Source: Schmidtea nova | Taxonomy: Eukaryota | Reading direction: 5' to 3' | Length of the DNA stretch: 64,000 nt | Assembly: GCA_044892505.1 (NCBI GenBank) | Contig: CM097882.1 | Location: 294,066,001-294,130,000 of the forward strand | In this document: one piece after another, positions 1 through 5,084 of the stretch | How positions within the stretch are numbered: the stretch's first letter is position 1 | Layout of the letters: each line of letters begins with the position of its first letter | Translations under genes and position numbers: made by a program | Notes under the pieces: generated by a model | Seen by the model: the letters and a program-made list of their open reading frames with translations, nothing else | Database searches by the model: none | What the model was told of the DNA's origin: nothing

Positions 1-287
1 CCTAAAAGTATTTAAAAATTAATTAAAAATAATTGTAGAACAAAGATAACTTTTCAAAGCTTATCATATCATTATGAGATCAAAATGAAAGTTTTAAAAG
101 ATATCTTTATAAAAATATTTACCTGAAAGCCTGAAATATGTTAAAAATCATAATTTCCTAAAAGTATTTAAAAATTAATTAAAAATAATTGTAGAACAAA
201 GATAACTTTTCAAAGCTTATCATATCATTATGAGATCAAAATGAAAGTTTTAAAAGATATCTTTATAAAAATATTTACCTGAAAGCC
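1..287. repeat. Tandem duplication, period 156 bp (~131 bp copied); related to an inverted diverged copy at ~21360-21450
   Basis: cctaaaagtatttaaaaatt...acctgaaagcc occurs at 1-131 and 157-287, near-identical. Confidence 0.9.
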
Positions 288-1112
288 ATATTAAAATGGC
301 TAAATAATCTTCAACAAAAATTTTTATGAGTAACACGTAGGTATACACACCTACTGGTATTATAATTACTTTTAAACTACAAAAACAGGTGTATGACATT
401 AAATTTCTTAAACTAAATAGTCAAAATTTAGCACCAACGTAAGTTTTCATTTGATATTGGTAATTTTAAACGTATATTATAGAATCTGTTAATGTATGAA
501 AGCAGGAGTATGTATAGCGAAGCAGTTACCTAATTAACTTTGAATAGAATTGAATGTTAACTGGACTTTTTAAATATTGCAATTTTCTTTTGATTCTTTC
601 AAATATTACAAGTAATTTATATTTCTCCATCAAAGATTTGTTCACTATAAATCTTGATCTTTTTAAAGACTATTCTTTTCGGAGTTTTACTAATTATATT
701 AAAACAGACAGTAGTAGGGAGTTAATCTCCTCTGGACGGTTCCATCCCAAGTGTTTTTAAACGACAGTAATTTTTGTATACAGTCTTTATTTCGGATTTT
801 TGAACTAAAATTTTTTCTCCGTCTTCTATAAAAATTCTTATACATAGATTTCAATGGTCAAATTTTAGTGGGTACATTTTTCAAATAAAAATTGTAAAAG
901 AATTTTGAATTGGATTTTTAGCTCTCAGATTTTTACAAAACAAAATATTATTTAGTCATTTTTAATACAGATTTTTTTGGAAAATAAAAACACAAATATT
1001 TTAATATACAGAATTTTTATTTTGTACATAATTTTCAGCTGTCAAATTACTCTACAGACAAAATTGATGTAAACCTTTTGTACTTAGATATCGGTATACT
1101 CAATTTAAGATA

Positions 1113-1940
1113 CAGTGCTCGACATATTTATAAGGACACATTTTTTTCGTTCTTGATGAATTTTAATGAAATTTCACATGTAAGTTAGTGCTCTCGTGTG
1201 AAAGTATCTGTAAATGATTTCAGTTCGTTTCAACCATTTTTGAAGAAGCTATGTCCATTAAATAAAAAACATTAGTTAAAACGCAACAAAGTTATAAGGA
1301 CACATGATTTATATTAATAAATATGAATTCTCATTAGTGCGTATGACTGTCATTTTTAATGAAAATATCAGATACTAGGTTAGGCATCGATTTTATGAGA
1401 GTATGGTACTTCTGCTATCTTCCTTCGAAAACTTGACGTAAAGTGTTCACAAAAAGTTTCTACAGGTTTTAAGTCTGGCCAGAGTGAAGGCCAGTCCAAT
1501 AAAGCGATGTTCTATTGTTCAAACCAATTCAAAGTTCACGTAGCATAGATGGGAGCGTTGTTCTGTTATGATGTTTATGTTCGACAACTTATTCTTGCAC
1601 CACATGGTAGTAAATGGTTTGTCAACCTTTTTGGTAGACAGTTATATTTTTTGTCCATTAATTAAACGTGATATTGTTTTTGCCGTCCCATACAAAAGCA
1701 TCCCTTACTATGGCAGAATTTCCTTTTTTTGTGCGGCGTCACAATGTAAATAATTTTTTTTTGAGGTCCTGAAAGTGAAACAAGCTCCTCTGGGATCGTC
1801 TAAATTGAACTTTTTTTTATAGTTGGAAAATTTTCATCTCCATTGTATTGTTTCTGCCAATTATAGTCGATTCTTCTCGTGGTGAGTTTTAAATGCTGGC
1901 TTTCTATTGATTTTGAAACGTTTTAATAAAAGTAATTGTA
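1113..1940 (-). mobile_element. Tc1-like DNA transposon remnant (3' half plus one IR/DR-type terminal repeat)
   Basis: TA|CAGTGCTCGAC terminus at 1113; direct repeat tataaggacacat at ~1129 and ~1293; minus-strand decayed motifs FNLDDP (cf. FNLDGPD), QNNAPIY (cf. QDNAP.H) and WPSLWPDLKPVE (cf. WPS.SPDLNPIE). Confidence 0.8.
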
Positions 1941-1943
1941 GTG

Positions 1944-2170
1944 GCCGTTACAAGGTCTTACCGAACCTTATAAATCTTATATGATCAACATAAACCAAAT
2001 TCAAGCTGCTCAAATTGATTTGAAAGAAATAATAAAACAAATCGAAAAGATTCTTTGGTCAAATTAGTTCAAGAAGTTCCAATAAATTATCAATAAAATT
2101 GGGACACAAAGTTAAAATCAGTGAAAGATAAAATCAAAATAAAAGAATTAATTTATTAAATAGAGAAACA
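1944..2170 (+). pseudogene. Putative retrocopy of a spliced-leader trans-spliced mRNA (SL-like 40-mer at 1944-1983)
   Basis: GCCGTTACAAGGTCTTACCGAACCTTATAAATCTTATATG resembles planarian SL1 as recalled (GCCGTTAGACGGTCTTATCGAAATCTATATAAATCTTATATG); it ends in ATG and is followed by ATC, not a GT donor; 3' end approximate. Confidence 0.65.
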
Positions 2171-2553
2171 GACCATTATCAGACACCAGTTGAAATACTA
2201 ATACTATTGGTGGATTACCAATGGGTGTTTGACCTCCGTTTCTATGGTAACTACAGTCATCAAACAGGATTCCCATGGTTCATCAAACTATTTCCCACCC
2301 AATATACCCATAAGTGTATGACTTAACAAACTTAAGTTGGTAATGTATACCAGTGTTTGGTGGTCGAGATCAGTGGTGAGCACGCTTATCGCACTTCACG
2401 CCTGCAACCTACTGTTAGGGTCAGGCTCTTGGCCTTAAAGAATAAAGAGAGCGGATTCTGAAAGTAATAATATTAAATTACTTAAAATAGATTAATAAAA
2501 TAAACTATTTAAGAAAACAATTACCAAAAATAGAATTAAGTTATATTTGGTAA

Positions 2554-5084
2554 CACTACCCGACACTAAAATTTTTTATTTGATGAGAAGAAGTTGGTAT
2601 AGGATATTTTTGCAAGTTGATTACAAAAATGATATCGAAATTTTTCTATCACGTCCAGTTTTTTATAAAAAGGATATTCGAAAATGTTGAAGAAAATCTA
2701 TGTTACATACATTTTATCACATCCAGATTCAGAGATAAGGCTTTAAAATCGTATCGGTTTTTATTTTATTTATTTTAATGCATACATAAGATATAATGGT
2801 TGCTCCCTTTAATTTGTTTCAATGAAGTAAAGCTGGCTAAATTATAAATTCCCTTCGTTATTTTACTAAAGTACGTAATTCGATAATGCTACTTAATAAT
2901 TATTAGTAAAGGTAGATTCCTGAACTACTTTAAAAGAGTATAGTATATTTAGAACATGTGCACTATCGTGAATTAATTAATGTTTCAATGACAGTAAACT
3001 CTCTTGCATTTTAGAACTACAATCATGTCTAGAAGAAAATGCTTGAACAACGTAAACCATTTTTGCTACATATGTGGAGAATATGTATTTTCTGACGACA
3101 GACTATCAATCACTGCATTGATTCAACATAGATTTTATTGTTATTTTAAATTCAAACTTGGTGATCAAGACAAACCATTTGCACCTCATACCGTTTGCAG
3201 AAAATGCTCTTCGAATCTTTCCATGTGGTCAGTTGGGAAACTGAAAAAAATACCATTCTCAACTCCTATGGCATGGAGAGAACAGTCAAGCCACGTAAAT
3301 GATTGTTATTTTTGTCTGACTAATGTCAAGGGTTTCACCAAGAAAAGTGCTAAACACATAGTTTATCCTGATTTGCCTTCAGCAGTCCGACCAGTTCCAT
3401 ACAAAGAAGGTGAAAATCCTCCAAAGCCAACTGACACGTCTGCTTGTAAAGAAAATGAATACAATTCAAACAATAATGGAGACGACACGAGCAGTGAAGA
3501 ATACATTGATGAACATACTCATGAGACAACGGGACTCAGCCAAGCTCAATTGGACTTGTTTATAAGAAAGTTCGAATTGTCTAAATCTGATGCTTGCCTG
3601 GCAGCATATATGTTAAAAGAATTTGGAGTTTTAAACAAGGAGACAAGAATTTCAGTTTATAGACACAGAGATATGAATACCAGGTTTACTTCAAAAAGGA
3701 CGAAGACAGTTCTTTTGTGTATTGTTGTGATGTTAATGGCTTGCTTGGAAAGCTTAGTTTCTTCAGTGATGCTAAGAAAGATTGGTGGTTGTTCATTGAT
3801 GGCAGTGTCTGCAGCATTAAAGCCGTTCTTCTGCACATTGAAAACAAATATCCAGCTGTCCCAATGGCATATGGAAGACTAGTTAAAGAGACTTATGAAA
3901 CAGTGAATACCATCCTAACACTTATTCAGTACAGTCAATATCTGTGGTAGGTTGGTGGAAACCTCAAAATTGTTGGAATGCTCATGGGCATGCAACAGGG
4001 CTACACCAAATTCAGCTGCTTTTTATGTCTGTGGGACAGCAGAGATAAACAAAACCACTACACTACCAATCAGTGGCCAGCTAGACAGACCCGAATACCT
4101 GGGACATATTTAATCAAATACAACTTTTTAGTCGATCCTAACGACATCTTGTTACCTTCTCTCCACATCAAATTGGGCCTGTTTAAGTAATTTGTTAAAG
4201 CCTTGAATACAGAAGGAGAGCCAATGAAAACACTGAGACGGACATTCCCCAGATTGTCCAAAGCAAAGATAAAGGAAGGAGTTTTTGTCGGCCCACAGTT
4301 AAGGAAGATAATGGAAAGTGAAGTGTTCAGAGTGACACTCAACCAGGTAGAACTTCAAGCCTATAATGCTCTCTTTGAGGTAATCAGAGATCTTTTGGGA
4401 AAACACCGCTCTAGCAACTACAAAGAAGTCGTTTCTGAGATGCTTGATGCTTTTGCTGCACTGACGGTAACTTCAAATATTGTGGCTGTAGCATATTATT
4501 ATTTTTCTACCTCTTACAGGTCAATATGTCTCTCAAAATTCATTTTTTGAAGAATCATCTTGAATTTTTTCCTGACGATCTGGGAAAAGTGAGTGATGAA
4601 CACGGTGAAAGGTTTCACCAGACAATCAAAACTATTGAAAATCGCTATCAAGGCAGGAGTGACTCAAAGATGATGGGAGACTTTTGCTGGTTAATGAATG
4701 TTGATACTTAAATTTTATTGACACTGCGTTTCTTTGCTGAAATATCAAATAGTGACAGCCTAACTCAGCGTATTTTTCCGTTTCATTTATCTCGCTGTTG
4801 AAATTCTCATGCAAGTATCTTTCTACTTCTGTCTGTGTTTATCATAAATTGTTTTCGCTATGATTTACTATATTTTTAATGACAATCTCCTTAAAAAATA
4901 TATCGTTAACTTCAACTAACTTTCCTTCTAAATGACTTTTTTTCTAAATTTCGGATACTGTTTTATATAAAAAACTAGACGTGATGGAGAAATTTCGATA
5001 AAAATTTCGGAATCAGCATGCTAAATTACCCTAGAGAGACACATTTTTATCAAATAAAAAAAAATTAAATTTTGTCGAGTAGTT
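2554..5084 (+). mobile_element. Chapaev3-type (CMC clan) DNA transposon with imperfect ~120-bp TIRs
   Basis: Left end CACTACCCGACA vs reverse-complemented right end AACTACTCGACA; TCACGTCCAGTTTTTTAT mirrored at ~4965-4985; encloses a transposase pseudogene; no clean TSD. Confidence 0.75.
3025..4711 (+). pseudogene. Chapaev3-like DDE transposase, disrupted; one 53-bp intron (4467-4519)
   Basis: N-terminal CYICG...H..C..C...DCYFC; FIDGS; GNLK (normally GDLK); GYTKFSCFLCLWDSR; LHIKLGL; MSLKIHFL; SDEHGERFHQ; frameshift ~3670; stops at 3948 and 4188; GTAACT...TTACAG intron restores the frame. Family name is from recalled motifs. Confidence 0.8.

What the first reader, a model, noticed from the sequence alone, without database searches (positions are those of the whole stretch)
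1944..2170. Spliced-leader sequence fused to non-GT DNA: candidate retroposed trans-spliced mRNA
Seen: a 40-mer ending TATAAATCTTATATG followed by ATC AAC ATA..., open for 28 codons from the leader's own ATG, exactly where the Tc1 remnant stops. Established: flatworm SLs end in AUG and SL RNA genes continue with a GT donor and Sm site. The match to planarian SL1 is from memory, with about 3 substitutions plus a changed 3-5-nt stretch. Inference: a full-length reverse-transcribed mRNA was inserted here, preserving an old or species-specific SL variant and pointing to the taxon.
Basis: partly seen in the sequence, partly recalled or inferred. Interest (0 to 1): 0.72.

Follow-up and report, generated by a model that had tools for sequence, protein, structure and literature searches.

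The report
Decayed spliced-leader-headed repeat copy
This is a real fossil of the flatworm's spliced leader joined to a transcript body, but it is one worn-out copy of an old, extinct repeat family of at least 40 members, not a lone retrocopy of a host gene and not a new leader variant.

Summary
Window 1944-1983 matches the genome's own 42-nt spliced leader (SL) at 36/42 positions. No GT donor follows it. The leader's ATG opens a 28-codon frame, and the Tc1 remnant's homology stops at 1937.

The SL plus its body (1937-2207) is one copy of a dispersed family, here called "W". It has at least 40 copies, 67-86% identical to this one, with unrelated flanks.

- Most copies start sharply at TGTAGTG(G), directly before the SL.
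- Three "long-form" copies carry about 200 nt more upstream.
- The family's majority SL matches the canonical leader at 40/42 positions. This copy's other differences are therefore private decay, not a species-specific leader.
- Shared SL substitutions (T18C, T37C, and A40T in one lineage) indicate the SL was passed on as DNA from master copies. It was not re-added by trans-splicing each time.
- Every copy examined has stops. No intron-bearing parent, poly(A) tail or significant target-site duplication was found.

Most likely, one trans-spliced RNA was reverse-transcribed once and then amplified from genomic masters.

This is ordinary repeat biology with a neat marker, so interest is low to moderate. 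The genome's far larger SL class (at least 1,039 SL copies behind a Pao/BEL-like LTR head) was already noted elsewhere in this scan and is not present at this site.

The parts
1111..1937 (-). Old Tc1/mariner remnant, truncated at its transposase N-terminal side
   Evidence: Terminal repeat TACAGTG... at 1111-1138. A minus-strand ORF fragment contains DWPSLWPDLKPVE. Genome copies are 64-89% identical and none aligns past window 1937.
1937..1943 (+). TGTAGTG, the family-specific 5' extension in front of the SL; the sharp 5' end of most W copies
   Evidence: Present in most copies while the flanks further upstream are unrelated. At least 8 copies start alignment exactly here.
1944..1983 (+). Spliced-leader-derived 40-mer ending in ATG
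   Evidence: 36/42 to the canonical SL of the genome's own SL RNA genes. Unique in the genome at up to 3 mismatches.
1981..2067 (+). 28-codon remnant of the family's ORF, which starts at the SL ATG
   Evidence: ORF list. The same N-terminal peptide appears in most copies. The tool's 5-copy consensus stays open for about 84 codons, apart from two codons whose first base is unresolved and could read as stops.
1984..2207 (+). Body of the W repeat copy, with an internal deletion of about 95 nt relative to subfamily i
   Evidence: Homology to at least 40 dispersed copies.
2209..2457 (.). Unrelated interspersed repeat inserted into the W copy; its 3' limit is uncertain
   Evidence: All copies begin sharply at TGGTGGATTACC with unrelated flanks. 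A possible 8-9-nt duplication AATAcTAT / AATAaTAT flanks it.
2458..2528 (+). Probable 3' remainder of the W copy (weak)
   Evidence: Local alignment to the 3' ends of subfamily-i copies scores only about 2.3-2.7 sd above shuffles for two copies and is not significant for the others.
2551..3030 (+). 5' end of a young, abundant transposable element that cuts off the older nested elements; it continues beyond 3030
   Evidence: Forty scored copies at 93-96% identity, nearly all starting at window 2551-2553. The read-depth jump at 2550 agrees.

Best explanation
Window 1937-2207 (probably continuing at about 2458-2528) is a decayed copy of an extinct interspersed repeat family, W. The family's founder was a trans-spliced RNA: the 42-nt SL joined at its exact 3' end (the AUG) to an ORF-bearing body, then reverse-transcribed into the genome. 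The family then amplified from genomic master copies rather than from repeated trans-splicing. Transcripts began 7-8 nt upstream of the DNA-encoded SL, so nearly every copy starts with TGTAGTG(G) followed by the SL. This copy landed in, or next to, an old Tc1 element. It later received another repeat insertion, and a young transposon cut in downstream. Shown: family membership, the exact SL-body junction, the sharp common 5' end, shared SL substitutions and decay. Inferred: reverse transcription as the copying step, and the master-gene model.
For: 1. The SL identity rests on the genome's own SL RNA genes, which have a donor, an Sm-like site and three stems (fold z = -4.6). 2. Forty-one hits to 1925-2200 lie on all three large scaffolds at 67-86% identity. 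The 29 copies fetched have unrelated flanks. 3. All 16 copies within 3 mismatches of the junction 32-mer have the SL end before ATCAAC. None has AG. 4. The majority SL matches the canonical leader at 40/42, with T18C and T37C in 18/26 copies each. Subfamily ii is uniformly C18/C37, and 5/8 of its copies carry A40T, which destroys the ATG. 5. A40T clusters on a tree built from the body alone: 4 changes against a shuffled mean of 7.9, reached by 4/300 shuffles. The SL variant therefore travels with the lineage. 6. Three long-form copies share about 200 nt upstream, while the other copies begin exactly at TGTAGTG. This is what source loci and their transcripts' copies would look like. 7. The subfamilies diverge exactly after ...GAAACAG. 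One copy lacks a roughly 95-nt block bounded by CAG|ACC on both sides, which is compatible with alternative splicing of the source RNA. 8. The tree is star-like with long terminal branches, and every copy has stops.
Against: No poly(A) tail was found and the 3' end is not sharply defined. Candidate target-site duplications are no more frequent than chance in this AT-rich DNA. No intron-containing parent gene and no protein relative were found. The 7-8-nt 5' extension is not what a plain retrocopy of a capped SL-mRNA predicts and needs the master-copy assumption. T18 and T37 copies do not cluster on the tree, so the order of SL changes is unresolved.
Confidence: 0.7

Rival explanations
1. W is an older product of the genome's LTR-head system. 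In that system a Pao/BEL-like retrotransposon carries the SL 105 nt inside its LTR, and SL-capped RNAs are joined behind that head, possibly by strand transfer at the SL. TGTAGTGG would be the last trace of an older head.
For: At least 1,039 head|SL junctions exist in the genome. The head follows integrase/DUF5641 ORFs and a purine tract in L020. The cargo includes an intron-free proteasome alpha cDNA. The modern head ends ...ATTGTAGGGCGAGCC..., which resembles W's ATTGTAGTGG over about 9 nt.
Against: No head was detected upstream of any W copy or in the window. Alignment of W's upstream flanks, including the long forms, to the head scores within the shuffled range. Tc1 homology runs right up to 1937, leaving no room for a head. 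Modern head-linked copies keep the whole 105 nt.
Confidence: 0.12
2. W is a DNA-level mobile or duplicated element that once captured an SL-bearing fragment. The copies spread without an RNA intermediate.
For: No poly(A) tail and no significant target-site duplication were found. The 5' terminus is sharp and begins with TG.
Against: No terminal inverted repeat was seen by eye in the aligned copy ends; no dedicated repeat search of the W ends was run. The subfamilies differ by exon-like blocks at CAG junctions. Long and short forms fit a promoter-plus-transcript relation. The SL-body junction itself still needs one reverse-transcription event.
Confidence: 0.12
3. One reading: a single full-length host mRNA retrocopy inserted here, preserving an old or species-specific SL variant.
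For: The SL-body junction is exact and the ORF starts at the SL ATG.
Against: At least 40 copies share the body, the 5' extension and derived SL changes. This copy's extra SL differences are private.
Confidence: 0.03
4. An SL RNA gene or pseudogene, or a chance or Tc1-derived resemblance.
For: 36/42 identity to the SL.
Against: There is no GT donor. Only three loci in the genome match the SL RNA beyond the exon, and none is here. The Rfam scan of the window returned nothing. Tc1 copies never align past 1937. The chance expectation is about zero.
Confidence: 0.02

Closest known systems
Dinoflagellate retrogenes carrying DNA-encoded relic DinoSL (PMC5585692, PMC6050394, PMC12014239)
   Same: A spliced leader sits in genomic DNA at the 5' end of a transcript-derived copy and marks passage through a trans-spliced RNA and reverse transcription.
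   Different: Those are retrocopies of many different genes, often functional and re-trans-spliced, with stacked relic leaders. Here one transcript gave a multi-copy, now dead, repeat family with a 7-8-nt extension before the SL. No stacked leaders were seen.
Partial SL sequences associated with LTR and LINE elements in parasitic flatworm genomes (PMC12582326; 597 discarded loci)
   Same: Flatworm SL sequence without SL RNA features, inside repeated mobile DNA, interpreted by those authors as integration of transcripts that had received the SL.
   Different: That report concerns parasitic flatworms and gives no element-level anatomy. Here the element is a short ORF-bearing unit in a free-living triclad-like genome, with source-like long forms and SL substitutions that follow the lineages.
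Master-gene retroposon families derived from cellular RNAs (SINE-like or mRNA-derived retroposons; general knowledge)
   Same: Many dispersed copies, a sharp 5' end at a presumed transcription start, subfamilies with diagnostic substitutions, a star-like phylogeny and decay.
   Different: No A-rich or LINE-derived tail, no target-site duplication and no internal pol III promoter were shown. The head is a spliced leader, not a tRNA, 7SL or 5S sequence.
Bona fide planarian SL RNA genes (Zayas et al. 2005 and Rossi et al. 2014, cited in PMC12582326; sequences could not be read here)
   Same: The leader sequence.
   Different: No donor, Sm site, stems or gene promoter. The window's leader is fused to an ORF.

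Membership tests
SL RNA gene | Leader exon sequence ending in AUG | tested here: met
   36/42 to the canonical SL and ends in ATG.
SL RNA gene | GT splice donor immediately after the leader | tested here: not met
   ATG is followed by ATCAAC. The whole family has the same junction.
SL RNA gene | Intron part with an Sm-like site and stem-loops | tested here: not met
   Only the three C2 loci match the SL RNA beyond the exon. Their fold shows the expected architecture. Rfam found nothing in the window.
SL-tagged retrocopy of a trans-spliced RNA | Leader joined at its exact 3' end to non-intron sequence in genomic DNA | tested here: met
   The junction is confirmed in contigs from three samples.
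SL-tagged retrocopy of a trans-spliced RNA | Intron-bearing parent gene with an AG acceptor at the junction | tested here: inconclusive
   None among the 16 junction matches at up to 3 mismatches. More diverged hits could not be fetched. No transcriptome was available.
SL-tagged retrocopy of a trans-spliced RNA | Poly(A) tail and target-site duplication | tested here: inconclusive
   No A tail at the aligned 3' ends. Flank repeats are no better than chance. The copies are too old and AT-rich to decide.
Interspersed repeat family with master copies | Many dispersed copies with unrelated flanks and a common terminus | tested here: met
Interspersed repeat family with master copies | Shared diagnostic substitutions and subfamilies | tested here: met
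   T18C and T37C are in the majority. A40T clusters with the body lineage, reached by 4/300 shuffles.
Tc1/mariner element (SL as part of its consensus) | Other Tc1 copies align through the 40-mer | tested here: not met
   No Tc1 match extends past query position 838, which is window 1937.
LTR-head (Pao/BEL-like) SL-cargo class of this genome | Conserved 105-nt head directly upstream of the SL | tested here: not met
   The head is absent from the window and from all W loci.

The most novel reading that the evidence does not exclude
W is a previously undescribed kind of planarian retroposon. It would be an mRNA-derived, spliced-leader-headed family whose about 120-codon coiled-coil-like ORF used the leader's own AUG as start codon. 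Its ancestral leader (C18/C37) would record a second SL class that may survive as the single genomic locus with exactly that variant followed by GT (C1:551021862).
Probability: 0.2. Interest if true: 0.55.

Novelty: new member of a known kind. Interest (0 to 1): 0.33.

Why it matters
It shows that SL sequences in this flatworm genome are reliable markers of RNA-derived DNA. It also shows that such a fossil should not be read as a leader variant or as a single-gene retrocopy without a family census. The W family gives a dated example of an SL-capped transcript becoming a repeat, with the leader then evolving as ordinary DNA. It also separates this older class from the much larger LTR-head-linked SL class. 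That distinction matters for SL gene annotation and for repeat masking in planarian genomes.

Tried and rejected
- **Published SL sequences.** They could not be retrieved: a full-text search for the leader found nothing and Rossi 2014 is not held. I used the genome's own SL RNA genes as the standard instead.
- **Rfam.** The scan of the window returned nothing.
- **tRNA-derived head.** ARAGORN found no tRNA in 1800-2700.
- **Protein relatives of the W ORF.** An 83-aa stop-free piece gave no hit. Pfam gave nothing above cut-off.
- **Target-site duplications.** 9-10-nt flank matches occurred in 4 of about 20 copies, about the chance rate.
- **Link between W's upstream flanks and the LTR head.** Not significant.
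- **Second Tc1 terminal repeat downstream.** Not found within 3 mismatches. Whether the missing Tc1 part lies beyond the nested elements is therefore open.
- **Inverted terminus for the young element at 2551.** None found.
- **Further loci.** I did not try to get those letters another way.
- **RNA evidence.** No RNA run holds the stretch, so expression was not assessed.

Full report
**Observation**

The 40-mer at 1944-1983 is unique in the window and in the 1.25-Gb assembly at up to 3 mismatches. Its terminal 15-mer is expected 0.02 times by chance in the window.

To judge whether it is a spliced leader (SL) I did not rely on memory, and the published planarian sequences could not be retrieved. 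Instead I looked for SL RNA genes in the same genome.
- A cluster of three genes on C2 has an AT-rich upstream region, a 42-nt leader ending in ATG, a GT donor, a single-stranded AAUUUUUAA-type Sm-like site and a terminal hairpin.
- The 108-nt RNA folds into the classic three-stem SL RNA shape, with z = -4.6 against shuffles.
- These are the only three loci in the genome that match beyond the exon.

The window's 40-mer aligns to that leader at 36/42 positions, with four substitutions and two 1-nt gaps. ATCAAC follows it rather than GT. The frame from the leader's ATG is open for 28 codons, at 1981-2067.

Upstream lies an old Tc1/mariner remnant on the minus strand. It has a terminal repeat at 1111-1138 and a transposase C-terminal fragment. 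Homology to other genomic copies never passes window 1937. The leader is therefore not part of the Tc1 consensus.

Contigs from three samples of one study bridge the Tc1|leader and leader|body junctions without a single difference. The arrangement is real DNA and not an assembly artefact.

**What the unit is**

Searching the genome with the region after the leader, and then with 1925-2200, gave 41 hits on all three large scaffolds at 67-86% identity. In the 29 copies I could read, homology runs through the leader and stops 7-8 nt upstream of it. Most copies begin with TGTAGTG(G) followed by the leader, and what lies further upstream is unrelated from copy to copy. I call this family W.

- All 16 genomic matches to the junction 32-mer (up to 3 mismatches) are preceded by the end of the leader. 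None is preceded by AG, and none is a perfect match.
- Every copy has stop codons.
- A tree of the bodies is star-like with long terminal branches.

The family is therefore old and extinct. In the tool's five-copy consensus the frame from the leader's ATG stays open for about 84 codons, apart from two codons whose first base is unresolved and could read as stops. Stop-free pieces of up to 83 codons survive in single copies. No protein relative or Pfam family was found.

**The leader inside the family**

The column-wise majority of the W leaders equals the canonical leader at 40 of 42 positions. The two differences, T18C and T37C, each occur in 18 of 26 copies.
- Subfamily ii is uniformly C18/C37, and five of its eight copies also carry A40T, which turns the ATG into TTG.
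- On a tree built from the body alone, A40T needs only 4 changes against a shuffled mean of 7.9. Only 4 of 300 shuffles do as well.
- The minority T states at positions 18 and 37 do not cluster.

Shared, lineage-linked changes inside the leader mean it was inherited as DNA from master copies. It was not freshly added by trans-splicing for each copy. The window copy is C18, T37, A40 and has further private changes. Its oddities are decay, not a species-specific leader.

**Source-like copies**

Two copies (L080, L082) share about 200 nt upstream of TGTAGTG at the same roughly 72% identity as the rest of the family. A genome search with that region found only one more such locus and one fragment, and all three long forms run on into the leader. 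The other copies start alignment exactly at TGTAGTG.

This is the pattern expected if a few promoter-bearing source loci were transcribed from a start 7-8 nt before the DNA-encoded leader, and the transcripts were copied back into the genome.

The subfamilies diverge exactly after ...GAAACAG. One copy lacks a roughly 95-nt block bounded by CAG|ACC on both sides. That fits alternative splicing of the source RNA, but a deletion between the 6-nt repeats would look the same.

**What is not shown**

- The 3' end is not sharply defined and I saw no poly(A) tail.
- Candidate target-site duplications are no more common than chance in this AT-rich DNA.
- No intron-bearing parent was found.

Reverse transcription as the copying step is therefore an inference. 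It rests on the exact leader-body junction, the dispersed copies, and the relation between long and short forms.

**Local history**

W (1937-2207) abuts the truncated Tc1. A second, unrelated repeat begins sharply at 2209 in all of its copies and is inserted into W, possibly with an 8-9-nt duplication. W seems to resume at about 2458-2528, but the alignment is weak, only about 2.3-2.7 sd above shuffles for two copies. A young, abundant element (93-96% identical copies) starts at 2551-2553. Whether the missing part of the Tc1 lies beyond it was not settled.

**Genome context**

A 34-mer covering the leader's 3' part has 355 matches at up to 3 mismatches, against a control of 0. About four fifths of the 100 listed are followed by something other than GT.

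Nearly all of the SL copies I inspected sit behind a conserved 105-nt head:
- all 30 fetched loci have it, plus a second inverted copy in L022;
- the head|leader junction occurs 1,039 times;
- in L020 the head follows integrase-type ORFs (weak Integrase_H2C2, below its cut-off; DUF5641, above its cut-off) and a purine tract, so it is the start of an LTR of a Pao/BEL-like element;
- behind the leader come different sequences, among them an intron-free proteasome alpha-subunit cDNA.

Earlier notes of this scan describe the same head-plus-cargo class. I used them as a lead for the LTR test.

W is not part of that class as far as I can tell. No head is present in the window or in any W locus. W's upstream flanks, long forms included, do not align to the head better than shuffles. 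A 9-nt resemblance (ATTGTAGTGG against the head's ATTGTAGGG...) remains unexplained.

**Comparison and verdict**

The closest known cases are two:
- dinoflagellate retrogenes tagged by DNA-encoded relic leaders (PMC5585692, PMC6050394, PMC12014239);
- the partial leaders found with LTR and LINE elements in parasitic flatworms (PMC12582326).

Use of the flatworm leader's AUG as an initiator is established (Cheng et al. 2006, pmid 16230357, as cited in PMC4233971).

The finding is a genuine SL fossil, but it is a worn member of an extinct repeat family. I rate it a new member of a known kind, of low to moderate interest.

Noticed in passing
L002-L031 (e.g. L012:1370-1515; L020:1-1500); genome-wide counts: A conserved 105-nt head (starting TGGTCGCGCCCGC) sits directly before a near-perfect SL at 1,039 places. 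In L020 it follows Pao/BEL-type integrase/DUF5641 ORFs and a purine tract, so it is the start of an LTR. The sequence after the SL varies; L012, L014 and L025 carry an intron-free proteasome alpha cDNA. One idea: the SL acts as the repeat (R) region, so strand transfer can join any SL-capped host RNA behind the LTR head.
   Followed up: partly
L086 (G000:C2:409013914-409017649): The only three full SL RNA genes detectable in the assembly lie within 3.7 kb, two on the plus strand and one on the minus strand. Each is 108 nt, with a donor, an Sm-like AAUUUUUAA site and a terminal hairpin.
   Followed up: yes
G000:C1:551021862-551021895: A single genomic locus has exactly the W-type leader variant (C18, C37) followed by GT. 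Its intron start does not match the canonical SL RNA within 3 mismatches. It could be a second SL RNA class or another retrocopy. It could not be fetched.
   Followed up: partly
G000:C1:260054411-260066640 and other same-strand pairs: Perfect SL copies followed by CT recur four times at about 4,066-bp spacing. Many other SL or head|SL hits come as same-strand pairs 4-9 kb apart. This fits LTR pairs or tandem arrays of the SL-bearing element.
   Followed up: no
window 2551 onward (ORF from 3025): A young, very abundant element (299 first-look candidates; the 40 scored are 93-96% identical) has a fixed 5' end CACTACCCGACAC. An ORF begins MSRRKCLNNVNHFCYICGEY. No inverted partner terminus was found in the window.
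   Followed up: partly
window 1-300: A direct duplication of about 130 nt (about 1-131 and about 157-290), seen by eye. A related piece occurs in L055.
   Followed up: no
window 2209-2457; L034-L051: A separate old interspersed repeat starts sharply at TGGTGGATTACC. It has dozens of copies at 71-79% identity, and other copies run further 3' than the window's. Its nature is undetermined; ARAGORN found no tRNA.
   Followed up: partly
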